64,000 nucleotides of DNA, taken from the NCBI RefSeq assembly GCF_963853765.1, contig NC_088857.1, forward strand, positions 38,068,001-38,132,000, written 5' to 3'. Positions within the stretch are counted from its first letter, which is position 1, and the number at the start of each line of letters is the position of its first letter. Below are positions 417 to 24,335 of the stretch, in pieces. A program made the position numbers and the translations under genes. The notes under the pieces are model-generated. The model was not told the origin of the DNA. It was given only the letters and a program-made list of their open reading frames with translations, and made no database searches. This DNA comes from Magallana gigas (Eukaryota).

Positions 417-3400
417 ATGGAAAGGTGATTATAAAATGCAGAAATGAAAGACTGATCTTTATTTAAAACGGAGAAAACCTCGAAACTGTAGAAAAAGGGG
501 GGTGGATTTTAAAAAATCTTTTTCTCAAGAACTACTGAGTCAAATTCAACGTAATTAAGCATAAATAATCCTTATGGAAAGGAAAATATTAATTGCAAAA
601 ATTATGGGCTAATTCTGTTTCAATTTGAGTAATTAACGAAAATAAAAATAAAGAGATAATCGCTGTCAATCAGTATATAACTTCGGGTTCAGTATTCCAT
701 ATCGAAAACGAAAGTTCTTTGTTTGAAGCAGCCATGTTTGAATGTTGACGCATGACAAACGGGTCAAACTGACAAAGATGAATTTGCTTGTTGAGCAACA
801 GTTCGAAGGGATACTTGAAACATACAAAATATATTTGTGCTGATTTCGTGAAGTAAATTGAGGTTAAAACTTTCAATGCGTTTACATTTTCACTTGTGAC
901 GGTGGTTTTAGATTGTTTTGATTTTCGTTTCATTTTCGTAAATCATGCTTTGTAACTTGAGGAGAACTATCCCCTGTATTTTGGAATTTTTACGTATCGA
1001 ATCAAACATAGACTTCGGTCAATAAGACAGCTGATTGTTTACCTGCACAAAATAAGCAAAATCTGATGCACTAACAACATTTTATATTATAAATACTGTT
1101 ACATATTCGCCCTAGCACTATAACACATGGATCACAACAGAGGCTGCCATCTTGGAACTACTTTATTATTATGTATTAATGCGCATGACATAAACAACAT
1201 ATAGAACCGAGCATGTAAACATTCCGGATATAACATCTTCTCCCTCCTTAAGAATGATGTACATACATGTTTCATTTGTTGTTGCATGTGCAGTATTTCT
1301 ATACGCCAACAAGAAATTTGCCAGTTTTCTTTCAATGCTCCCTGCATCATTCTTACTGCATTTCATGGCTTGCTTGAAAGTTTGGACAAAACGCTCTGCA
1401 AGTCCATTACTAGATGGGTGGTACGGTGATGTCTTGATGTGCTTTATGCCGTTAGCATTCAAGAACTCTTCAAATTCTCTTGAGGTAAATTGTGGGCCAT
1501 TGTCACTCACAATTGTTACTGGAAGTCCATTTCTGGAGAAAATGGTTCTCAGAACATCAATAGTACGGGTTGATGTGGTTTTGCTAACTCTCCATCTTTG
1601 TCAGTAGAAGTCCAATCACTGTTAATGCACGACATGACACGACCTAGAACTACGTCATTACGAGTTTCGTTTTGAATGTTTTTGCTAAAAACTGGTAGAG
1701 TTTCAATCTGTCCAAGATAAAAAGCGTCCACCATATCTATGGTTACATCAGACTCTGTGCTTTTCAGTGGTAAGCGTGACATGGAATCTGCATTCGCATG
1801 CTTAGAAGTTTTACGGAATCCAATTTCGTAGTCATAAGCAGACAAGAAGAGAGAATAGCGCTGTAATCTTGAAGATGCTGTAACTGGGACTCCTCTCTGA
1901 GGACTGAAAATGTGTATCAAGGGCTGATGGTCGGTGATCAACTTGAATTTCCTACCAAACAAGTACGAATGGAATTTCTTGATCCCCCATATGATTCCCA
2001 AGGCTTCTTTATCAATCTGAGAATAGTTTTTCTCCGCTGGTGCTAATGTGCAAGAGGCGAATGCGATTGGTCTCTCTGTTCCATCAGGTAGCTCATGAGA
2101 AATAACTGCACCGAGTCCATAAGGTGATGCATCACATGCCAGGGAAATAGGCAAGTCAGGGCTATAATGTGTAAGTACCAGATCTGATGCTACTAAGTCC
2201 TTCACCTTGTTGAATGATTCTTCACAGGATTCTGTCCAATTCCAATGGCTGTCTTTTCGCAACAAGTTATGCAACGGTCCAAGTACTGTTGCCAGGTCAG
2301 GTAAGAATTTACCATAATAGTTCACTAAACCTAAGAACGATCTTAGTTGAGAGACATTACATGGGGAAGGTGCTTTAACTATGGCATCAATCTTCTCTGG
2401 TGTCTTGTGTAGACCATTTCTATCAATCACATGTCCACAAAAGGTAATGCTTTCCTTGAAGAATTCGCACTTCTCTAGATTTGCTCTCAGTCCATATTGG
2501 CTCAATCGCTTCAGTACCATGTCCAAATTCCTGAGATGTTCTTCATTATTCTTGCCGGTTATAACCATGTCGTCTAACATGCACTGAGTTCCAGGGACTC
2601 CTTGTAATACTTGCTCAAGGGTCCTCTGCCAAATAGCAGGCGCTGACGCTATGCCAAAGGCCATGCGATTATAACGATATAATCCCTTATGTGTGCTAAT
2701 GGTAAGTAGCTCCTTGCACGATTCATCCACTGGAAGTTGCAAGTATGCTTGCTTCAAATCGATCTTGGAGAAATGCGTTTCACCATTTAGGTTGGCGAAG
2801 ATGTCATTGAACTTCATTTTTCCTGTCGTTTCCTCTGGAACGTCTATTCTTCACATGCAGTCTGTTCACGGCTCCTGTATCTGTCCGATTCCTAGCCTGT
2901 ACTAATTCTGTTGCATCCTTAGCTGCCGCCTCCATTGCCACACTGATCTCCATAGCTTTTTCAAATGTCAAGTCTTTCTCTGACAGCAAGCGCTTTTGAA
3001 TGTGAGGGTGTCTTATACCACATACCACTCTATCCCTCAACTTTTCATTTAGCGAAGCATTAAAATCACAATAAATCTAGAGTTTCTTTAACTGAGCTAC
3101 ATACTCCGTTATTGTTTCTCCTTCCTTCTGGTCTCTTTTATCGAAACGGAAGCGTTCTGCTGTTTTGATGGGCTTAGGGGACAAATGCCTGTTGAGTAAT
3201 GTCACCAAGTCCTGATAAGTCTTCTCAGCTGGTTTATCAGGAAAAGTCAAATCCCGCAGGAGAGAATATAATCGTCCACCGATGAGACATAATAAAGACG
3301 GTACCTTTTTTCCAGGATCTATCTCATTCACCGTGAAGTACTGCTCAAATCGTTCGACGTAAGATTCCCACGGTTCGATAGTCTCGTCAAATGGGTCAAT

Positions 3401-6400
3401 CTTTCCAATTAAACCAAATGCCGCCATTACCACAGATCCAAAATATAATGGGACGGGTTAGAAACAGACAATTTGGAATAATTTGAGGTTACCGGAGTTT
3501 ATCCTCGTCGCCAATATGTTACATATTCGCCCTAGCACTATAACACATGGATCACAACAGAGGCTGCCATCTTGGAACTACTTTATTATTATGTATTAAT
3601 GCGCATGACATAAACAACATATAGAACCGAGCATGTAAACATTCTGGATATAACAAATACTATACATTCTTTTGATAATTCGGTACGATCTATATGTAAT
3701 GGTTAATGAATACAACATGTTTTGTTAAGATGCTTGGCATTTTCAGTTTAAACGGATATTGTTTTCGCTGCTAGAAATATATAGGTATATATATATATAT
3801 ATTATGAAAAATAAATTGTGCTCTTTCTTTGTTTTAGTGCATGTTTGTTCTGTTTTAATTGTTTAAAATTTCTCTTTACTAACCATATTTGAGTGTCAAG
3901 TTTCGAATTATAAGCAAGATACATAGCTTTGCTCACAGAACTGAGGCCATGCTTTTGTTCAATTACATTTTAAATGCTGAATCGGAAACACCAAATTTAA
4001 AAATCTTAAGTTGAATGTAATAAACTCTTCTGAACAAAAAATTGACTCAAACCTAGCAGAAATTCGAGCTCTGTATCTCTTCTTATAATTCTACGATTGA
4101 CGCTGAAATTTTGATTGATCACTATAAATGTCTCGCTAAACGTTAAATACCTGTACAGATATATTAAAAGGATGATATGCTGTAACTACTTTGTGGGGCC
4201 CCCTCCTTATACGATGAATTATATGAAATCTACACCAACATTGATGGTTTTTCAGACACAATTAAATAAAAACGACTCGCTATTCTTAGAAAATTTTACA
4301 GCGGAATATCATCTTGATTTGTAGCTGAGTGGGGGGGGGGGGGGGCTAAACTTTATTAGAAATCTTGACAAGCAAAAAAAAAGGATTTTGAGTACTGCAA
4401 TGTCTAACTTTGCAAAAAAGGGGAGGGGGGCACCCCCGGCTCCGACACATTGATTATAATAGCTCTTTAGCGTATAACATTACAGCATTTTTCATTCGAG
4501 TGTATTCATCAATTATAAGTGAGTAAGGTTATAAAATGTCACACGAGTTCACGCCTGGTAAACAACAGTGGTTTATAATGCGGAAGACCAATTAAATTTT
4601 TGAATGTTTTTGATTTTAGCGCATTGAAGTACAATTTTCTTCTTTCACATATAGGAATTTTTTAAATAAAATACAATAACTAGCTAGTAGTTGAAGACTA
4701 AAATGTACCTAAATGCATGCTCTCATATATAATTTGAGCGCTTTATAAAGTTAGGGGACAGAACTAAAATAAAGGGAATTGGAAGTTAACGATGTAACCC
4801 TACCAAAAATTTTGTTTTATATCTTGTATAGGATGTTGTTTTTGAAAACAATGGTATTTCATAAAGGTACAATGCCAAAGATTAAGTGTAGCAAAATAAG
4901 TGTAAAATTTAGATACTTTATGGTATTCTTTTTTGTTTTTCTACTGATGGGCCATATGGCACAATATCCTTTGGACACCCATATAAAGCCATTCGTGCTC
5001 AGGTGAGCGATGTGGCCCCATGGGCCTCTTGTTGTAAGTCAGTATGTAAGTTGCCAGACCATTGTGGTAGCTACAGTATTTGAGTCAGCTTGCCGCTCAT
5101 CAAACACCATACTCAAGATAAACATTACAAGAAAGTTCCTAGTTGATTTCCATTAATGTCAAATCCATGTTAGATATTGTCCGTCTAATGTATAGAATAA
5201 GGGGACATATATATTTTGAAGAACAGATATTGTTCAATCCTTTATAAAAATGAGTAGGTTCTTTCTGATGTCTGTTTTAAAGTTAGATTTATTCATTTAA
5301 TTTCAGGAAAAAATACGAGAGTTTGAAAAGAAACTGGATTCTGGAGAAATTCTGACTGAAGTACCATGTTTTGAATCCATTGTCACAAGTAACAGCAAAG
5401 TTAGCAAATTAGTGAACAAAAAGGTAAATCTTTATATGGGAATTCTGGTATGAAAATAATTATGATAGCATGTATAGGAATTAAAGCTATGAATTGCAAA
5501 GTACATGTATGAAATATGAGGTCACTCTGCCTTGCTGATTTTTGTGTACAGATATTAACATTTTTTTTATGTGATGCAACAAAACCTTTAACAATGTCCT
5601 AGAGTAATGATATAAGAAATTTTTCAGAACTCAGAGTTTGCATTAGTATGATGTAATTTTTGGTACCTTCATGATACAATTTATGCAATTGTTAAGCATC
5701 CGTAGTACATTTGCTTTCAATGAGATAATGAAACAAAGCTGAGAAATTTTCCCCACAATCAATGATATATTTTTCTTTTTAGAAAATGAATAGTCTTCAG
5801 AAATTCAGTCAAGAGCTTAGCCATAATTCTATTAAAAAGACAGCCACTGCCTCCAGCATTGCTGACAATGACAGTGTAGTTGGATTAGTGGCAGAAAATA
5901 GGAGTGTGTCAAATTCACCTACAGATGAGATGATGAATCCAAATCCAACCAAGACTGTAAGTGATAGTCAAATGGCAAAAAAGAAAACTAAAGACAAGAC
6001 AAAGAAGAAGGGAGTAAAGTCTGGAGGGAAGAGTCAGGTCAAGGAAGGGCAAAGTAAGCTCAAGGACAGTGGAGAGGTCAAGGCTGAAAAGAGAGACAAG
6101 CATACGGCAGAACAAACTCAACAGCAGGTACATGTACATTGTGTATATCCTATATATTTTCCTTGGATAAAGTGATGTGTATCTCTCTTCATATGCACTT
6201 GCAGCCTTTTGGTTTTTACTGTTGTAAATAAAACTTATAGTACAAAGTTGTCTTTGGAAAACCTTGAGGTATTTTTCTTCGAAATGTCACAAATTGATGT
6301 TTATTTTAGATCTAAATAATGTAAAATGTTATCTTTTGTAGGCCACTGTTAATAATGGTAATCTATCTACACCAGAAGAAGTGGCACAATTTTTACAACA

Positions 6401-9400
6401 TGAATGGGAAATGTCTCAAAAACAAGGTGTTGTTGATGATACAGTACTAGTGAGCAGCAATATGGAGAATCCTACAGGGGCAGATAATTTACAATGCCCT
6501 CGGAGGGATGAAAAAATGGAAAGGAAGGAAACTCAAACGGACTCTGTATCAAAATCTAGTTTGAAAAGTGAAGTTTTGTATTCATCTAGTCACACTGTCA
6601 ATTCCTTAGATGTCAAGTCAAATTCAGTAGTAAAGCAGAAAAATGATGAGTCATCTGCAGATTTCAATTGTTCACCTTACATGACAAACAATTCAACTGA
6701 GGTTTTGTGTGAATCAAATGATGGAAATTTTTCCCCCACTGAACAAACTGTTGTATGCAATGTGCAGATTTCTTCTACTAATTTGGAAACAAATGAATTT
6801 GATATGAAACATTTAAAAAAAAATGAAATGCAAGTGAATGATCAAGAAAATGTGAATGGTGTTCCACTTGGTCAAACAAAACAAGCCATGCAGAATTTGT
6901 CAAATGAAGAAATGCCTCCTGCATCTGCAGTTCATGACATGATGGGTTCAAATCTAGAATCTCAAGTTTCCAACTCAACTGCTACTCAACAACAGACATT
7001 ACCAGAATCTGGTGTAACTGTGGATCCCATATTGTTTGAAGCAGTGAAGGCTCAAATTGCTCAGGTGTACCCAGCATTTGCAGCAGATCCAAGTGTGTTG
7101 AACTCGATTGCCCTCCAACAGACTATGGTGTTACAGGCGTGTGTTGCATCAGGGGGTAATCTGGGCATCAGTGGGGCACAGCCTGTTGTGGGCAGTGAAA
7201 AAGTGGATACAGAGCCAAAATTAAGTCTACAAATTCCTTCAGAAAATTCAGCATGCAAGCAAGAAAAAGATACTTCCAGCTGTGTTCAACCTCAACCTCA
7301 TCAACAAAAAGAGACCACTGACTTTTCTTTGGAAACTTCCATCCCAACGTCAGCAAGTGGGGCCATTCCAAAACGTGTAAGTTCATACCAGAATTCTGGA
7401 ATTATGGCAAATCCTTTACCAAATAGGAAGGAATTTGACTCTCAATTGGAGCAGATTCAAGACATTGCACCCCCACCCGGTCTTAGTGGAACATCTATTG
7501 CAAGCAACAGTAGTGGATCCAAACCTTTTAAGTTTGATGCAGAAAATAAAGCTTGTGATCCCTATAATATGCCTAGTGTACAGTCAGGTATTGGAGCTTC
7601 AATAAATCTGGATCATGTTAATCAGCCTGACCCAGCAACGCTAAACACACAGTCGGCGTATATACCACCTCTCATCCCTAAATCATTTGACACAAACTTT
7701 GAGCATCAAGCTCCAGAGGTGTCAGAAGGTTTCATGAAGTCAAGTGTTGATTACTTTGGAAACCAAAATAAAACAGAACAATTATTAACCATTGGTCAGA
7801 AATCTTCAGCTTTTCCTTCAAACCCAAGCCTCATCAGCAAAAGAGAGTTTGCACAACCAAGTATTGCACCAAAGGAGATGTCAAATCAGAAACAGTTGGA
7901 GAACAGTTTGGATTCCATAAGTGACAAAATCAGCAGTATTAATCTCTCAGCTGGGATAGTAGGGGGTTCACCTAACATCTTAAGGAAAGAACATTTCCCT
8001 CAGAAGGGTGATTCAAAAATGGAATCCCTCAACCTGGATGAGATTGATGATGATGAGGAGGAGGAGGAGGAGGAAGATGAGAAAGATTTTGCAATTAAAT
8101 CTAAGGAATCTCAAGATCTGTTCAATCAGTGGCAGAAACCATCCTTAACAAAGAGAGAGAACACCCCTCCTCCAGAGGAGACTAAGTCCAACCAGCTTGG
8201 GATGCAGAAACTGGGCAGTGTGATGCACACACGTCGCACTCAGCTGGAGAAAGGTTCACTGAGGGACTGGATGAAGAAAGACACAGAGGGTAAAACAACT
8301 GGTGGATTTTTATTTATAATAAATGTCCATTAATTTATTGCTTCATGAGTAGATTTAAAGTGGGATTTATTGCTCAAGGTGCAGTTACCTAATATGTAAG
8401 TCATGTTAAATAATGGTGAAAGGTAATGATGTTTAAAGCAATATGAGGTGTATTTTTAGAATTTTATTTTGCTGCATAAATTTGCTAGTATGATAAGTCT
8501 GCATGTAGATTAAAATCTTATGACAAATAAAATTTTAAAGAATCGTTAATTTTCGTCAGAAGAAAAATTTCTCTTCTAAGGAATATATAGCAGACCAATT
8601 TTTTTACAGGCCGACAATAATTCAATTTTGCTTCATTTAAGGCTTCTTTACGGCTTTTCCAATAAAAATATGGCTAACAGAACTTTAAAAACAGTGATAT
8701 TTTTGTCATTTTAGTAGAAAATAACATTTTTTGTAAAAAAAAAAAAATTTCAGCACGAAAATTGCAGCTCATATTGCTTTAAAGATCTTTTCATAGAGTG
8801 AGAACCTATTCAAATTGAAGAACTTGTGTTCAAACCTATTGTATATTACCGGTATTTACATAACGAAATATCTTCAAACCATTTCTTGATTTTAGTGGAA
8901 GTGGGCCGTGCTGTAGATCAGTTGGATCAAATTTCTTATGGTTCTGACACACAACAGCAACTTGATGTCCAGGCACAACCTCAAGGACAGCCTAGATTAA
9001 TCAAAGAAACAACACCAGAAGAAGAAGAGAGCTGGACTCAAGTAAGCATAGCAGGTTTTTAAAAAAATATCAAAATCTGTGCCTATACAACTGTCCTCAC
9101 AGGTTGAAAAGTTCTGAAAACATTTTGATTTAGTTTAAAAAAAAAAGAATTTCTATTTAAAATGTGTTAGGTCACCAAGAAAGGGAAGAAGAAAGAGATG
9201 ACCCAGCCTCTTCCACCCTTGAATCCACAGCCTTCCATAAATCCACCACCTAAATTGTCTGCGACATCAAGACCATCTTCTGAAAAGAGCAACAACTTTG
9301 AGAGACTTGTTCAGAGACTTGGTGAAATCTTTGCAGGATTAAGCAGGTTTGTTGACTTATATGGCACTAAAACTGAATAAATAAAATTATTTGTAGCAGC

Positions 9401-18920: not shown

Positions 18921-20381
18921 TCATTTGGGTATGTCGGAAGGATCTATACACAATCCGGAGACATCATCAAAACAGACTTTTGTGGAGTTCAGTGGACTGG
19001 TTCGACAAATGTTCGACTGGAGAGTGGGTTCTACATTAGCAGACAACTTGGCGGCAAGGTAAGCAAACAGGAGAATCTCTAAAACAAGAACAATAAATGT
19101 CACGATCATGCATAATCTCTCAATTAAGAGAGCGACCCGTTTCCACGTCACTTCCGTCAAAATCGCGTTCGAACTTTTGATGGCGTCATCTTTAGACATG
19201 CGTTGATCCTCGACCGACGACTCGTCTATTTTGTTGTTTTTTGCGACATTTCTTTTGTAATTGTTGGCAATTTTACGAGAACATGGGTTGAAGAAAAAAG
19301 TTACGATTCGTTTGATAAGGAATGGAATCGGTGCTGTTTCTTCCCGCTGGTTCAGCATCGCCGTCAGAAAGCTTGAACATGTGATGAAGGCACTGAGAAG
19401 AAACTGAAAAACCAGGAAATATATGATAAGCGGAACCGGATTGGAGGTTTCTGGGATTAACCCCGCCACGTAGATGAGATAAACCGTGAAAGACAGAAGA
19501 AGAGCAACGCAAAACGACAATCGATCCTCGGGTACCGCCGGGATGAAATAAACAACGGTGTTTAGCATACTGAGCACGAATAATGGAACAGCAATGTTCA
19601 GGAATAGGTAGGCCGGTCTTCGAATCAACTTAATTGGAAAGACGAGGACTCGGCGTTCGTTATTGTGTTCCTGGCCATAGCGACTAGGCGCAAGGTCCAG
19701 ATCACATGGCTGCATAGGAAAATAAATCCATTTCGCGTTATCGTAGAACACTTGAGTCTTTTCAGGCATGTTGGCTATCACCGTCGAAGTAACCACGAAC
19801 TGAACGGAGCATTCATGTTCATCGAACGGAAAGTTCTCCAGATTTGGCTGACAATATGTATCTGTTTTCACCAAGCCATCATAAAAGAGAACGCCAATGT
19901 AACCAAGAACCGCAGCTTCATTTCCTTTATCCTTAAAAATATCCATTTCACCCAGTGGGTTAAACAAACGTATACCTGGTCTCCAGATTTCTCCTAGTTT
20001 CATTGGTAAGTACGAGATGGTGTAATTAATGACCGTCTTTTCTTGTAGTATTGCTATGGTATCGGTATCCCACTTCAAGCGCTTGTCGCTCCATAACATG
20101 AATATAGAAGAAAGAAGTTTCAACTCTCCGTTGATTTCGTCAAACCTTTCTAATCTGGATACGTCAAACCGTAATCCAACTCTTGTAAGAGGTTCATCCG
20201 AAACCTTATATCCACCGTTCTGACTAAAAAGTTGGTTTCGTAGGTTAGACGAAGCGTTTAAAAGTTGAACCTTTTCATTTTCTTCGAAATTGAATTTTTC
20301 CGACAGATAATCCACAGAGATACCGTAAGAAAATCTCAATGACGCACAATATAGAAACAGTACATATTTTAGCGTCTTCAT
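18921..20381 (-). CDS. Intronless Cys-loop ligand-gated ion channel subunit (divergent nAChR-like, non-alpha), 486 aa
   Basis: Signal peptide; WSDKRLKW; IWRPGIRLFN; Cys-loop C-QPNLENFPFDEHE-C (13-residue spacing); RRP before M1; four hydrophobic helices; M2 DRLSFCVALLLSFTVYL. Single uninterrupted ORF. Confidence 0.92.
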   Translation of the reverse strand: MKTLKYVLFLYCASLRFSYGISVDYLSEKFNFEENEKVQLLNASSNLRNQLFSQNGGYKVSDEPLTRVGLRFDVSRLERFDEINGELKLLSSIFMLWSDKRLKWDTDTIAILQEKTVINYTISYLPMKLGEIWRPGIRLFNPLGEMDIFKDKGNEAAVLGYIGVLFYDGLVKTDTYCQPNLENFPFDEHECSVQFVVTSTVIANMPEKTQVFYDNAKWIYFPMQPCDLDLAPSRYGQEHNNERRVLVFPIKLIRRPAYLFLNIAVPLFVLSMLNTVVYFIPAVPEDRLSFCVALLLSFTVYLIYVAGLIPETSNPVPLIIYFLVFQFLLSAFITCSSFLTAMLNQREETAPIPFLIKRIVTFFFNPCSRKIANNYKRNVAKNNKIDESSVEDQRMSKDDAIKSSNAILTEVTWKRVALLIERLCMIVTFIVLVLEILLFAYLAAKLSANVEPTLQSNICRTSPLNSTKVCFDDVSGLCIDPSDIPK

Positions 20382-21687
20382 TTTGAGACCTGATTTGCGT
20401 CTTTTTAGAGATCAGCTGCCACCAGTACCGTTGAAATTGGAGAGCTTTCGTTCGTCACACTACAAGTACCGGTCAGCTTCAGGTTGAATTTGTCTTGAAA
20501 ATGGAATACAATTCATCATAATTTAAAGTTTAATACCACAGTGTAAGATAAATAATTAATAGACCACTAAGGCTCAAGAGAGTATTACACAAACGTAATT
20601 TTGAGGTAAAATAAAAACATTTTCAGTAAAAATTGATTTACTTCTAGTAAATGAAGCAAGTATAATTAGAGGGGAAAACGAAAAATGGACAAACAACAGG
20701 CTCGATCGAGCGTACTGTGGTGCATATCAATAGTTTCCTGCATTGTATTTATTCTGTGCAGTGAATGAGGTATCCCATGGGATTTGCCCCTGGTGACACA
20801 TGACCTGCACTGATACGATTCTATGTTGTTATATCAATTGAATGTCATAATTTCTATATTCGTGGTAAAGTGTGATACAAAGCACCATTAATGTAATGAT
20901 TATTTACCTAAACCGACAGATCAGACAATATAACGAGTCTGTACGAAAAGCCTTGCATCTTCGTCTTTTCAGAAATGCATTTGACAGCATGGTTACGTTG
21001 TATACAGTCGAATTATTTTTCTATAACAGAAAAATATGTTGCAGGTTTTTGAATCTGAATGTAAAATGTTTTAAAACGCTCCCCCCCCCCCAAAAAAAAA
21101 AACACATTAAAAATGAATGTTAAATGAAACGAAAAAAACAATATTTTGTTTTCCAGGTTACCGTTTCTATCAAAATTTGTCGATTTCTTGATAAATAAAC
21201 ATACCTGTCAATGAAAACAATTGAAATCAATGAATGATTTCATTCTTAAGATTTCCTCTTTCACACCTCCCCTCTTCATACCCGGAGAAATTAACAGGAA
21301 CGAAAATACCTTTATCCCGGGGATTTATGATGGTAAAATCTGCAGGTAGTTTTTTTTATATTCATTCCGAAACAGGACACCTCAAACAATTTTTCAATAT
21401 GATCATCCGGGTACTTTTTATGTCGTTTGCAATTTCAAATCCCCACAGACTTATTTTTATTTGTGGCTGTGTATTGAAACTTAAAAAGATAGAGAAGGCA
21501 TTTCAAAACGGAGAAAAACTTGAATTGATTTTGAAGCAAAGGCATTTATGATTATCGAAATATTTAGCGAAAAGTAGTTGAAGCAGAAACTTGAAAAAGA
21601 AAACAGTAGTACTTTGTAATTTTTAATCAGCCACAGCAAGATATCAGTATGTCAAAGATATGAATAGACCACCTCTTTTCAATTCTA

Positions 21688-23148
21688 TCAACGAATGAGG
21701 TCAAGGGATATACACTCGGTTACGTTATCGATACAAAAATGTGACGTCATCTCTTTCATTGGGTTGGTCCGACAAATGTCGGACTCCAAGGCAGGATCCA
21801 CTGACGAATTAAGGAGAGAGGCGAGGTACGCAAACAGCAGAATTTCTAGGAAGAGAATGATGGTGGTTATGGTGAAAAACATTCTGTCCACGACCGTCGA
21901 GATATTGTTCCAAGTGATATTACTGGAAAGAGTTTCATCCGATGACGTGTTTACATCATATTTACTCTTTAAGTCACACTCGTCCGTATTAGTAAGTTTT
22001 GCGTCATTAGTGTTGTCCAGCTCTACATCTCGAACACGCTTTCTTTGAAATCGTTGGAATGCTCGAAGGATTACACGGGGAATCTCTTTCTTCCCTTGTT
22101 TTTGATTAAGCATGGCTGTCACGAAGCTGGAACAGGTTATGAAGGCACTGAGCAGAAACTGGAACAAAAGAAAGTATATTATCATCGGAACAGGGTTTGA
22201 AGTTTCCGGAATAAGTTCCGCCACGTAAATGAGGTACACTGTAAAGGAAAGCAGCAGGGCAATAGAGAAGGAAAGCCTGTCTTGTGGAACAGCGGGGATG
22301 AAGAAGACGACTGTATTCAGGATGCTGAGCATGAACAGAGGAACGGCTATATTGACGAAAAGGAACGAGGATCTCCGGATGATCTTGATCGGGAAAACAA
22401 GAACTCTTCGTTCTTTATTGTTTTGCCTTCCGTATCGACTTGGTGCTAAATTCAGATCACAAGGTGTTTGTGGGTAATATATCCACTTCGCGTTATCGTT
22501 GAATAGCTTTGTTTTCTTGAGTGAATTGGTAATAACTGTTGAAGTTGCTACAAATTGAACGGAGCATTCGTGTTCGTCAAATGGGAAATATTTCAAATTT
22601 GGTTGGCAGACTGTTTCCGTTTTCAGTAAACCGTCAAAAAAGACAAACCCTTCTTCGTGCACGACGGCTTTCTCATTTTCTGTCCCTTTGAATATGTCGT
22701 CTAACGGATTGAACAAACTGATATCTGGTTTCCACAATGACTTTAACTTGACATCTATGTATGCTACAGTCAAAGACAGTTTTGTCTTCTCTTGGTATAT
22801 GGACATACTGTAGGGATTCCAAGACAGTCGAAGATCGCTCCAGAATATAAAAACAGAAGATATTAGCTTTAAATTCCCTGCAACTTCATCGAACTCCTGC
22901 AATCTGGAAACTTCAAAATTGAAACCCACCCGTGTTATTGGATCATCGTCATCCTTGTACCCAGATTCGGGGCCCATGATAGAGTCCCGGATGTAGGCAG
23001 TGTAATTCAAAAGTTGGCGCTTTTCTTCCCAATTGAAATTGAATTTCCATTTCTGATAATCCTCGTACTGGCACATGGAAACGCACACTTCGTTAACAAA
23101 TATGAAAAATAAACCTAATCCAACTTTGTTTCCCATTTTTTTTAACAT
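21688..23148 (-). CDS. Intronless Cys-loop ligand-gated ion channel subunit, tandem paralog, 486 aa
   Basis: WSDLRLSW; LWKPDISLFN; Cys-loop C-QPNLKYFPFDEHE-C; M2 DRLSFSIALLLSFTVYL. Collinear with 18921-20381 throughout. Confidence 0.92.
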   Translation of the reverse strand: MLKKMGNKVGLGLFFIFVNEVCVSMCQYEDYQKWKFNFNWEEKRQLLNYTAYIRDSIMGPESGYKDDDDPITRVGFNFEVSRLQEFDEVAGNLKLISSVFIFWSDLRLSWNPYSMSIYQEKTKLSLTVAYIDVKLKSLWKPDISLFNPLDDIFKGTENEKAVVHEEGFVFFDGLLKTETVCQPNLKYFPFDEHECSVQFVATSTVITNSLKKTKLFNDNAKWIYYPQTPCDLNLAPSRYGRQNNKERRVLVFPIKIIRRSSFLFVNIAVPLFMLSILNTVVFFIPAVPQDRLSFSIALLLSFTVYLIYVAELIPETSNPVPMIIYFLLFQFLLSAFITCSSFVTAMLNQKQGKKEIPRVILRAFQRFQRKRVRDVELDNTNDAKLTNTDECDLKSKYDVNTSSDETLSSNITWNNISTVVDRMFFTITTIILFLEILLFAYLASLLNSSVDPALESDICRTNPMKEMTSHFCIDNVTECISLDLIR

Positions 23149-24335
23149 TAAATCTCGTGAATTTTATTCGTGTTAAAATGATTTTGTAAAAATTTCTCAC
23201 CACATAATTTCGTCCTTTTAAGCACCCTTAGAAAGGAGACATCCAATTTCAATATTTGATCGGGTTTTCAGCGGTGCATTAGACTAAATTAAAAGGAGAG
23301 ACGCTGCTCATCATTTAATCATAATAAACAGAAATTGCTGGGTCGTAAATTTCAACAACCATTAAGGACATCAGCAGTACACAACAGTCGCCGTCCATTA
23401 CACATATAGTAACTAGGTCTGCTCAGTCAGAAAGGGTGGTGAACTTTATTTAGTCGCAAAATTCACGGCATTTATTTTCATTTTTATGATAAACATTTGA
23501 TCGCAAATAACACGTACTGCTTGAGGGCTTCTTCCATCTTCGCTAGCCGAGGAGTTTCCGATACAGTTCAATCACCACAAACAATCTAACTGTATAAAAA
23601 AAAACGTTGAGTTTTACCCCAAACCAATGGCTACAACGTGTTAAGCATTTGGTATTGAGGTCAGTAAACCACCTTCTCCTGCGCAAATTGATTACCTGAT
23701 CCAATTGACTAGTATCCACTTTTATTAACACGGTTTGCAATGTGCTTTGATTCTTCAAACTATCGTCGCTGCTGCATCCATTTTACTTTCATTCCTAAAA
23801 ATCAGTGTTTCCTTCAAAGGATTTCTTTGCTACGCTACTTAAAATGGGCCCTTAAACGTTATTTGTTGTATAATCCGTTAGGATGTTTTTCCGTTAAAGT
23901 GGAAATAAAATTGTGACCAGTAGCTTTCATATTAATTTCAAAGTTATAGTATTTTTCTTTTTTCTTATGGAGGTTTCCTATATTCTAATGTAGCCACCCC
24001 TCACCCCCCCCCCCCCAACTTGTGTCCTCTCTTTCTCTGTTACTTAGTTAATATGGTATAACTTTAAATTTACAGCGATGTAACGTCTTCTCCCTATTTT
24101 TCTTTTTAGCAACAGGCACATACAAACATTGAACCCTATTTGATGGCCAGTTTTCATTCTCTTTGCATGAAGTATACTAGTACTTTTAAAGGGGTTTCTA
24201 TTTTAAAAAAATATGAATTCCAATTTGAGCATCTTAAATTTCCGACTTCCATAATTTAACAACCTTACCATAATTATAAAAAAAGCTTTTTACTGACTAC
24301 TAGTATTTTGTTCCGGGAAAAAAAACATATTTTAA

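What the first reader, a model, noticed from the sequence alone, without database searches (positions are those of the whole stretch)
18921..21800. Conserved 3-Cys extracellular C-terminal tail plus an extra Cys near beta9 in both channel subunits
Seen: after M4 both proteins continue about 37-40 aa with three aligned cysteines (NICRTSPLNSTKVCFDDVSGLCIDP; DICRTNPMKEMTSHFCIDNVTECISL), and both carry one extra Cys in the extracellular domain (PMQPCDLDLAP; PQTPCDLNLAP). That makes four non-canonical extracellular Cys, conserved while surrounding residues diverge. Established: canonical pLGIC subunits end a few residues after M4. Inference: two extra disulfides, one possibly stapling the tail to the extracellular domain near loop C (within or between subunits), forming an undescribed gating or ligand-access module.
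Basis: partly seen in the sequence, partly recalled or inferred. Interest (0 to 1): 0.72.

Follow-up and report, generated by a model that had tools for sequence, protein, structure and literature searches.

The report
Oyster channel tail stapled by cysteines
Two neighbouring oyster genes encode nicotinic-receptor-like channel subunits whose unusually long outer tail very probably is tied by a disulfide bond to the ligand-binding domain, a covalent "tail staple" so far seen only (in a different form) in the human zinc-activated channel.

Summary
Two intronless 486-aa Cys-loop receptor genes (minus strand, 18921-20381 and 21688-23148) each carry one extra Cys in strand beta9 (C226/C230, the position of muscle alpha1 Trp184) and a 40-aa post-M4 tail with three Cys.

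Homologues turn this into a nested pattern. A single clade of oyster and pearl-oyster subunits (27 sequences examined) always has both the beta9 Cys and a tail Cys, the latter 22-26 residues after an invariant M4 Glu in the 25 aligned. About 130 nearest outgroup domains and 26 own-genome paralogues have neither. Members with a short tail have only that one tail Cys. The subclade holding the two window genes added two more Cys, a longer tail and an 8-residue longer loop C.

This implies C226-C459 (tail to beta9) plus a local C470-C478 hairpin. AlphaFold2 models the tail as ordered (pLDDT 77-87), with a hairpin bracketed by C470 and C478. RNA-library contigs are colinear through both tails.

No S-S distance could be measured, so the staple is inferred, not shown. 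A functionally analogous C-tail disulfide (to the M2-M3 loop) is published for human ZAC, so this is a new variant of a known kind. The scan's index held no such note from other DNA.

The parts
18921..20381 (-). Gene 1 (type A): intronless 486-aa nAChR-like pLGIC subunit, stop codon included
   Evidence: ORF; Pfam LBD+TM domains; best solved relatives are nAChR alpha6/alpha1, E~1e-20; AF2 pLDDT 85 with nAChR fold, Z 25.7 to 9gu1
18924..19043 (-). Gene 1 post-M4 extracellular tail, residues 447-486, with an N-glycosylation sequon at N465
   Evidence: Translation check; AF2 M4 helix 413-446, tail pLDDT 80/87/78/77/68 per 10-residue block, hairpin strands 469-471 and 477-479; no solved pLGIC chain aligns beyond about residue 451
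19005..19007 (-). Gene 1 tail Cys459, proposed partner of the beta9 Cys
   Evidence: Invariant in 25/25 clade members and the only invariant column after the M4 Glu; always 22-26 residues after that Glu
18972..18974 (-). Gene 1 tail Cys470, proposed partner of Cys478
   Evidence: Present in 13/13 A/B members and absent from the short-tailed C and D types, apart from the C-terminal Cys of P0051 that the alignment places in this column; lies in AF2 strand 469-471
18948..18950 (-). Gene 1 tail Cys478
   Evidence: 13/13 A/B members; lies in AF2 strand 477-479 facing strand 469-471
19704..19706 (-). Gene 1 beta9 Cys226, aligned with muscle alpha1 Trp184, nine residues before the residue aligned with alpha1 Tyr190 (six in alpha1's own numbering, the oyster protein having three extra residues there)
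   Evidence: HMMER alignment to human alpha1; invariant in the clade; absent from about 130 outgroup domains and 26 own-genome paralogues
19620..19706 (-). Gene 1 beta9-loop C-beta10 hairpin, residues 226-254; 8 residues longer than in short-tailed relatives
   Evidence: The beta9 Cys to pre-M1 Arg distance is 28 aa in A/B types (30 in one) and 20 aa in all C/D types
19809..19853 (-). Gene 1 canonical Cys-loop, C177 to C191
   Evidence: invariant
19044..19145 (-). Gene 1 M4 helix, residues 413-446, with invariant Glu435
   Evidence: AF2 secondary structure; E435 invariant
21688..23148 (-). Gene 2 (type B): intronless 486-aa paralogue, 55% identical to gene 1
21691..21810 (-). Gene 2 post-M4 tail, residues 447-486, with Cys459 (21772-21774), Cys472 (21733-21735), Cys479 (21712-21714) and a sequon at N475 inside the Cys472-Cys479 loop
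   Evidence: contig of RNA-Seq run X2 spanning 21612-22322 is colinear through tail and stop codon
22459..22461 (-).

Best explanation
Genes 1 and 2 are the A and B members of a small clade of orphan nicotinic-receptor-like pLGIC subunits. Its named members come from true oysters and the pearl oyster Pinctada imbricata; several come from unnamed assemblies. In this clade the extracellular post-M4 C-terminus is covalently tied to strand beta9, at the base of loop C, by a disulfide (C226-C459 in gene 1, C230-C459 in gene 2). In the oyster A/B subclade the tail was lengthened by about 21 residues. The addition forms a small beta-hairpin closed by a second disulfide (C470-C478; C472-C479 in gene 2), and loop C grew by 8 residues in the same subclade. 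Shown here: the sequence pattern, its phylogenetic nesting, the fixed M4-to-Cys spacing, an ordered AF2 tail, and colinear contigs from RNA libraries. Inferred: the disulfide connectivity. Also inferred, by analogy with human ZAC: the staple links the peripheral M4 helix mechanically to the loop C hairpin, restrains loop C and ECD-TMD motion (a brake or set-point on gating), and places the glycosylated tail hairpin beside or in a degenerate orthosteric pocket.
For: (1) Co-occurrence. Among the top 150 hits of a profile search of 1.84 billion representatives plus 29 own-genome paralogues, every clade sequence with a Cys at the beta9 column also has a tail Cys (A, B and C types; P0022, P0044, P0046, P0048, P0049, P0051; later P0193 and P0194). 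About 130 other domains have neither and end 0-10 aa after M4. (2) One clade. The 21 carriers placed on the tree form one group (SH-aLRT 98, and 97 with the trait columns removed). The 3-Cys A/B types are a nested clade at 100. (3) Parity. Short-tailed members keep only the beta9 Cys and one tail Cys 1-10 residues from the C-terminus (mostly 2-5), so these two are the ancestral pair and the other two Cys arrived together. (4) Ruler. The tail Cys lies 22-26 aa after the invariant M4 Glu in 25/25 although the spacer sequence is not conserved. (5) AF2. The gene 1 tail has pLDDT 77-87, against 47-64 for the intracellular loop, and its strands 469-471 and 477-479 carry C470 and C478. The L003 (type C) tail has pLDDT 78-85. 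(6) No Cys in the M2-M3 loop and no other conserved free extracellular Cys. (7) Tail sequons are conserved within each type (NxT at 465 in A, NVT in B), which fits a lumenal, exposed tail. (8) Contigs from RNA libraries run colinearly through both tails while the intergenic bins are empty. (9) Precedent: the hZAC Cys289-Cys394 C-tail disulfide, whose loss gives constitutive activity.
Against: No coordinates were available, so the Cys226-Cys459 and Cys470-Cys478 distances were not measured. AF2 was run on monomers only. The co-occurrence traces to a single evolutionary origin, so it counts as one event plus long joint retention, not repeated correlated gains. Oyster C-type subunits carry an extra lineage-specific ECD Cys in beta2, and P0022 and P0051 have a second Cys at the end of M4, so Cys counts are odd in some members. 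Side-chain orientation of the beta9 Cys is unknown. No functional data exist for any clade member, and the ligand is unknown.
Confidence: 0.6

Rival explanations
1. The same Cys pair forms an inter-subunit bond: the tail of one subunit bonds to beta9 of its neighbour, so the disulfide cross-links the pentamer and acts as an assembly or stoichiometry lock, possibly between A and B subunits.
For: In hZAC the C-tail runs in the interface between two protomers. A and B genes are tandem neighbours and both types occur in oysters. The sequence evidence does not distinguish intra- from inter-subunit bonding.
Against: From general knowledge of pLGIC architecture, M4 sits beneath its own subunit's loop C side, and the hZAC tail disulfide is intramolecular. 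The AF2 monomer models already give an ordered tail without a neighbour.
Confidence: 0.15
2. A different connectivity in the A/B types: for example C459-C470 forms a local loop and C478 (or C470) bonds to the beta9 Cys.
For: Three tail Cys allow three pairings, and none was measured.
Against: Short-tailed relatives have only the C459-equivalent, at a conserved distance from M4. AF2 places C470 and C478 on facing strands of one hairpin. C470 and C478 appear together on the tree.
Confidence: 0.08
3. The extra Cys are not disulfide-bonded to each other. They are free thiols serving metal coordination or redox sensing, or the tail Cys links receptors to each other or to another protein, as in the disulfide-linked Torpedo receptor dimers.
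For: Torpedo nAChR pentamers are disulfide-linked and need DTT to separate; that this goes through a C-terminal delta-subunit Cys is from my own knowledge. Some clade members have odd Cys counts.
Against: An inter-receptor link would not need a co-conserved beta9 Cys or a fixed M4-to-Cys spacing. Free paired Cys in the oxidising ER lumen are unusual (general knowledge).
Confidence: 0.07
4. The tail is an annotation or read-through artefact, or is spliced out, and is not part of the mature protein.
For: None found.
Against: The tail and its Cys are conserved in the homologues from named species (Crassostrea, Saccostrea, Ostrea, Pinctada) and in many Logan assemblies. Contigs from RNA libraries are colinear across both tails and no joint was reported within either tail-coding stretch.
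Confidence: 0.02

Closest known systems
Human zinc-activated channel (ZAC) C-tail with the Cys289-Cys394 disulfide (PMC11707272; PMC13036004)
   Same: Both are pLGICs with a post-M4 extracellular tail that carries a conserved Cys paired with a second non-canonical extracellular Cys. In ZAC the tail runs up to loop C. Both have a degenerate orthosteric site. ZAC therefore gives a tested functional precedent: auto-inhibition, with constitutive activity when the bond or the tail is removed.
   Different: [quoted passage not shown] Here the M2-M3 loop has no Cys, the partner is in beta9, and the tail Cys is about 13 residues beyond M4. The A/B types add a second disulfide-closed hairpin. The oyster proteins are nAChR-like by sequence and fold, so the feature evolved independently. 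No function has been tested for them.
Expanded intronless nAChR-like genes of bivalves (Jiao et al. 2019, PMC6896357)
   Same: Intronless, tandemly arranged, divergent nAChR-family genes in an oyster. These two genes are ordinary members of that expansion in gene structure and arrangement.
   Different: That paper does not mention C-terminal tails or extra disulfides. Only 3 of the at least 88 paralogous matches in this genome carry the feature.
Post-M4 segments of vertebrate nAChR and 5-HT3 subunits (PMC9260303)
   Same: Extracellular extensions after M4 that may contact the ECD. Lengths of up to about 24 aa occur in muscle delta and epsilon subunits.
   Different: In muscle nAChR they are dispensable for folding and function, and none of the papers read here reports one disulfide-bonded to the ECD. 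They have no conserved Cys pair with beta9. No solved chain among the listed matches aligns with model residues beyond about 451.
Disulfide-linked Torpedo nAChR dimers
   Same: A Cys in the extracellular C-terminal tail of a pLGIC subunit forms a disulfide.
   Different: That bond is between receptors (delta to delta) and needs no ECD partner. The residue assignment is from my own knowledge; only the existence of the DTT-sensitive link is confirmed here.
Cephalopod chemotactile receptors CRT1/CRB1
   Same: Mollusc-specific nAChR-derived orphan or sensory pLGICs with remodelled binding sites. They appear among the sequence matches (8eiz, 9e6b, 8eis).
   Different: Only about E 1e-14 to 1e-15, no closer than the vertebrate nAChRs. 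No tail staple is known for them (own knowledge, not tested here).

Membership tests
Pentameric ligand-gated ion channel (Cys-loop receptor) superfamily | N-terminal ligand-binding beta-sandwich domain plus a four-helix transmembrane domain | tested here: met
   Pfam PF02931 and PF02932 above cut-off in both proteins; AF2 model with helices M1-M4 and Z 25.7, rmsd 2.5 A over 323 residues to human muscle nAChR
Pentameric ligand-gated ion channel (Cys-loop receptor) superfamily | Cys-loop: two Cys separated by 13 residues, with the FPFD motif | tested here: met
   C177-x13-C191 in gene 1 and C181-x13-C195 in gene 2, with FPFDEHEC
nAChR alpha-type, acetylcholine-binding subunit | Vicinal Cys-Cys at the tip of loop C | tested here: not met
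   The positions aligned with alpha1 C192/C193 are Q and E in gene 1 (alignment)
nAChR alpha-type, acetylcholine-binding subunit | Loop B tryptophan (alpha1 Trp149) of the aromatic box | tested here: not met
   The alpha1 'GTW' segment faces a 3-residue gap in gene 1 in the HMMER alignment; only a pairwise alignment, not examined further
ZAC-type C-tail disulfide module | Extracellular post-M4 tail carrying a conserved Cys | tested here: met
   Tail Cys invariant in 25/25 clade members
ZAC-type C-tail disulfide module | Partner Cys in the M2-M3 loop | tested here: not met
   The M2-M3 loop (residues 309-317, IPETSNPVP) has no Cys; the only spare conserved extracellular Cys is in beta9
ZAC-type C-tail disulfide module | The disulfide is physically formed and restrains gating | not testable with these tools
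   Needs coordinates, biochemistry or electrophysiology; structure prediction returns no coordinates
Bivalve intronless nAChR expansion (Jiao et al. 2019) | Intronless, tandemly arrayed nAChR-family genes in a bivalve genome | tested here: met
   Single uninterrupted ORFs 1.3 kb apart; at least 88 paralogous matches, mostly single open frames, in the same genome; description of the expansion

The most novel reading that the evidence does not exclude
The disulfide-closed, glycosylated tail hairpin of the A/B subunits is a tethered pseudo-ligand. It would sit under the co-evolved, 8-residue longer loop C in a pocket that has lost the acetylcholine-binding Trp. The channel would then be gated or primed by displacement, reduction or cleavage of its own tail rather than by a classical free transmitter. 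That would make it a covalently auto-regulated pLGIC that arose independently of ZAC.
Probability: 0.12. Interest if true: 0.8.

Novelty: new variant of a known kind. Interest (0 to 1): 0.5.

Why it matters
The 2025 hZAC structure paper states that a C-tail disulfide had not been seen in any other pLGIC. A second, independently evolved tail staple, anchored not to the M2-M3 loop but to the loop C hairpin, would show that covalent coupling of M4 to the ligand-binding domain is a recurrent way of setting gating in this superfamily. The case comes with natural variants for dissecting it: short tails with one Cys and long tails with three. It also marks 3 of the more than 88 oyster nAChR-like genes as a structurally distinct orphan group worth expressing. 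The bond is not yet demonstrated, the receptors are orphans of unknown ligand, and the phylogenetic range is narrow, so the interest is moderate.

Tried and rejected
1. Structure prediction returns only pLDDT and secondary structure, no model file appears in /data, and no multimer prediction is offered.

2. Foldseek and VIA-align against the PDB confirm the nAChR fold. All listed alignments stop at model residues 436-451, so they say nothing about the tail. ZAC was not among the listed rows.

3. Jiao et al. 2019 was searched for C-terminal, cysteine and disulfide; nothing relevant was found.

4. Two further full-text searches for a described tail disulfide in Cys-loop receptors or molluscs returned only the ZAC papers as relevant.

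5. The raw-read RNA run X20 gave one read, so it was uninformative. Expression evidence therefore rests on Logan contigs of RNA libraries, which cannot show strand or transcript ends.

6. The source organisms of the unnamed D-type proteins could not be established. The ENA contig had no DNA available and the Logan run is unnamed.

7. High-ranking multi-domain hits (P0042, P0043, P0045) were checked as possible clade members and rejected. They are fused tandem gene models without the beta9 Cys.

8. The TAG at the end of the L003 match was checked as a possible premature stop. It is the normal stop, shared by orthologues that end at the same place.
Full report
**What is there.** The minus strand carries two uninterrupted 486-codon ORFs, 18921-20381 (gene 1) and 21688-23148 (gene 2).
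- Both have the Pfam ligand-binding and transmembrane domains of neurotransmitter-gated channels and are 55% identical to each other.
- Their closest solved relatives by sequence are nicotinic receptor subunits, at about E 1e-20.
- An AlphaFold2 model of gene 1 (mean pLDDT 85, pTM 0.77) superposes on human muscle nAChR with Z 25.7 and 2.5 A over 323 residues.
- The window lies on contig C5 of a 564-Mb genome. The homologues with species names are oyster proteins: Crassostrea virginica 73%, Saccostrea and Ostrea about 60%.
- The genes belong to the known expansion of intronless, tandem nAChR-like genes in bivalves (PMC6896357). This genome shows at least 88 paralogous matches.

Cys positions were verified codon by codon.
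- Gene 1 has the Cys-loop pair C177/C191, one further ECD Cys at 226, and three Cys at 459, 470 and 478 in the segment after M4.
- Gene 2 has C181/C195, C230, and C459, C472 and C479.
- The remaining Cys lie in the signal peptide, the membrane helices or the intracellular loop and are not conserved.
- AF2 ends the M4 helix at residue 446, so the tail is 40 residues long.
- In the HMMER alignment to human alpha1, C226 aligns with alpha1 Trp184 in strand beta9. That is nine residues before the residue aligned with Tyr190 (six in alpha1's own numbering).
- The stated range covers gene 1 and only the tail of gene 2. Gene 2's beta9 Cys lies at 22459-22461.

**Distribution in relatives.** This is the key result. 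I ran three word-based searches and one exhaustive profile search of 1.84 billion representative proteins (11,754 hits, top 150 returned). I then aligned every returned domain and 29 own-genome paralogue ORFs to the clade profile. A Cys at the beta9 column, in the context KW-Y----PC, occurs only in the following groups:
- **Types A and B.** These are the orthologue groups of gene 1 and gene 2, found in Crassostrea, Saccostrea and Ostrea. All have three tail Cys.
- **Type C.** This is a third oyster gene (L003 in this genome, on contig C7, 34% identical) and its orthologues. Their tail is 17-20 residues long with a single Cys 4-5 residues from the end.
- **Type D.** These come from the pearl oyster Pinctada imbricata and from unnamed assemblies (P0022, P0044, P0046, P0048/P0190, P0049/P0191, P0051, P0193, P0194). 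Again the tail is short, with one conserved Cys near the end.
- **One exception.** A flatworm protein outside the clade also has a Cys at this column (see the passing notes below).

About 130 other domains, including the nearest outgroups, and 26 own-genome paralogues lack the beta9 Cys. They end 0-10 residues after M4 and have no Cys at the corresponding place. No sequence was found with one of the two Cys but not the other, apart from obviously truncated or frameshifted models (P0012, P0014).

**Phylogeny.**
- On a maximum-likelihood tree of 70 subunits, the 21 carriers form one group (SH-aLRT 98).
- A plus B form a nested clade (100) on a long stem.
- Removing the beta9 column and everything after M4 from the alignment leaves this unchanged, at 97 and 100.
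- The beta9 Cys and the first tail Cys therefore map to one change at the base of the clade. The two further tail Cys map to one change at the base of A/B.
- A search of the own genome with a D-type protein finds L003 as the best match, so this oyster has just three clade members.

**What the pattern implies.**
- In 25 clade members whose pairwise identity drops to about 26-30%, only four Cys columns are invariant: the Cys-loop pair, C226 and C459. C459 is the only invariant column after the M4 Glu.
- The short-tailed C and D types have exactly the beta9 Cys and one conserved tail Cys. These two are therefore the ancestral partners.
- C470 and C478 arrived together and are best read as a second, local pair.
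- The tail Cys lies 22-26 residues after the invariant M4 Glu in all 25 sequences, although the intervening sequence is not conserved. This is what one expects of a tether that spans a fixed distance.
- By the alpha1 alignment, C226 sits eight residues up strand beta9 from the invariant Trp218 at the foot of the ECD. By my own estimate that is roughly 25-30 A above the membrane interface. The 13 non-helical residues between the M4 end and C459, or the longer M4 helix that AF2 builds for L003, can cover that distance. This is a geometric plausibility argument, not a measurement.
- The distance from the beta9 Cys to the pre-M1 Arg is 20 residues in every C and D member and 28 (once 30) in every A and B member. 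The longer loop C and the longer, 3-Cys tail thus appeared in the same subclade, which suggests that they contact each other.

**Structure prediction.**
- AF2 gives the gene 1 tail pLDDT of 80, 87, 78, 77 and 68 per 10-residue block. The intracellular loop scores 47-64 and the tip of loop C scores 59.
- AF2 builds a hairpin with strands 469-471 and 477-479, so C470 and C478 sit on facing strands.
- For L003 it extends the M4 helix to residue 443 and adds a short helix around the tail Cys, with pLDDT 85 and 78.
- These results fit an ordered, docked tail and the C470-C478 pairing.
- The tool returns no coordinates and predicts monomers only. The decisive S-S distances, and the choice between an intra- and an inter-subunit bond, remain open.

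**Is the tail expressed?**
- Contigs from an RNA-Seq library (X2) run without a joint from 21612 to 22322, across gene 2's stop codon, tail and M4.
- A contig of X1 (a probable RNA library) covers 18942-19143, across gene 1's tail.
- The intergenic bins are empty, and no joint was reported within either tail-coding stretch.
- The same C-termini occur in many independent Logan assemblies and in NCBI gene models of other oysters.
- The variants seen in those contigs do not touch the Cys codons. For example, 18997 C>T changes residue 462 from Ser to Asn, as in P0001.
- Contigs cannot prove strand or transcript ends. Still, the refutation "the tail is spliced out" is not supported.

**Comparison with what is known.**
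In human muscle nAChR, post-M4 deletions of up to 24 residues were made in the delta and epsilon subunits, and the segment is dispensable there (PMC9260303).
- More importantly, a covalently tethered C-tail has been described. In human ZAC, Cys394, just after M4, is bonded to Cys289 in the M2-M3 loop.
- The ZAC tail then runs through the subunit interface to loop C and fills the degenerate orthosteric site. Deleting the tail or mutating either Cys makes the channel constitutively active (PMC11707272, PMC13036004).
- The first of these papers states that such a bond had not been seen in any other pLGIC.
- The oyster feature works on the same principle but differs in anchor: beta9 rather than the M2-M3 loop, which has no Cys here.
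- It also differs in the position of the tail Cys, in the extra disulfide-closed hairpin, and in lineage (nAChR-like by sequence and fold).
- I therefore class it as a new variant of a known kind that probably evolved independently.
- The bivalve nAChR expansion paper does not mention it, and further full-text searches found no description.

**Most likely mechanism.** Confidence is 0.6 for the connectivity and lower for the function.
- An intramolecular C226-C459 disulfide staples the post-M4 tail to the base of the loop C hairpin.
- In A/B subunits a C470-C478 hairpin, N-glycosylated in or next to it (sequons conserved within each type), packs against the lengthened loop C.
- By analogy with ZAC, this would restrain loop C and ECD-TMD movement and set the resting-to-active equilibrium. 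It could also occlude or reshape a pocket that has already lost the loop C Cys pair and the loop B Trp.

**Rivals.** These are an inter-subunit version of the same bond (0.15), another pairing among the A/B Cys (0.08), free thiols or an inter-receptor link as in Torpedo (0.07), and an annotation artefact (0.02).

**Limits.**
- One evolutionary origin means the co-occurrence is a single event followed by long joint retention.
- Some members have an odd number of extracellular Cys: a beta2 Cys in oyster C types, and a Cys at the M4 end in P0022 and P0051 that is Ser in P0193.
- The organisms behind several D-type proteins are unknown.

**Earlier notes of the scan.**
- The same stretch was also flagged for loss of the acetylcholine aromatic box (s1-403200). 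The pairwise alignment agrees in part.
- A follow-up on another piece of the genome called similar pairs catalogued members of the bivalve expansion (s1-394936). That agrees with the family placement here.

Noticed in passing
P0067 (Macrostomum lignano, UniRef100_A0A1I8JJA1), domains 288-524 and 714-1045: A flatworm pLGIC gene model has a Cys at the same beta9 profile column in two tandem domains, and a tail Cys about 7 residues after M4. This may be an independent occurrence of a beta9 plus tail Cys pair.
   Followed up: no
window 19620-19706 (gene 1 residues 226-254) and the corresponding part of gene 2: Loop C is 8 residues longer in all A/B-type subunits than in all short-tailed C/D relatives. 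The gain coincides with the extra 21-residue, 2-Cys tail extension.
   Followed up: partly
window 19770-19810 (gene 1, just after the Cys-loop): In the alignment to human alpha1, the loop B 'GTW' segment (Trp149) faces a 3-residue gap and the loop C Cys-Cys positions are Q and E. The classical acetylcholine site looks degenerate, as another first-stage note on this stretch proposed.
   Followed up: partly
L003:1363-2724 (G000 contig C7, about 18991773-18993134): This is the third clade member in the genome (type C, 453 aa). It has a lineage-specific extra Cys in beta2 (RFEC), conserved in 5/5 oyster orthologues but absent from all other clade members. It lies in a cluster with two paralogues (L005, L010) that lack the staple Cys.
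   Followed up: partly
window 18924-19043 and 21691-21810: N-glycosylation sequons are conserved within each tail type but at different places. In type A the sequon NxT lies between Cys459 and Cys470. In type B the sequon NVT lies inside the Cys472-Cys479 loop.
   Followed up: partly
window 19539-19799 joined to 22448-23300 in a contig of run X2: One 1433-nt Logan contig joins gene 1 and gene 2 sequence on opposite strands (table 5). It is probably an assembly chimera through the conserved transmembrane-coding region of the paralogues.
   Followed up: no
window 1549-2817, minus strand: A 422-aa ORF with reverse-transcriptase and RNase H domains (Pfam RVT_1, RT_RNaseH), so a retroelement fragment.
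   Followed up: partly
window 6381-8333, plus strand: A 650-aa ORF (GTG start in the mechanical ORF list) with no Pfam match at E<=0.001. Its nature is unknown.
   Followed up: no
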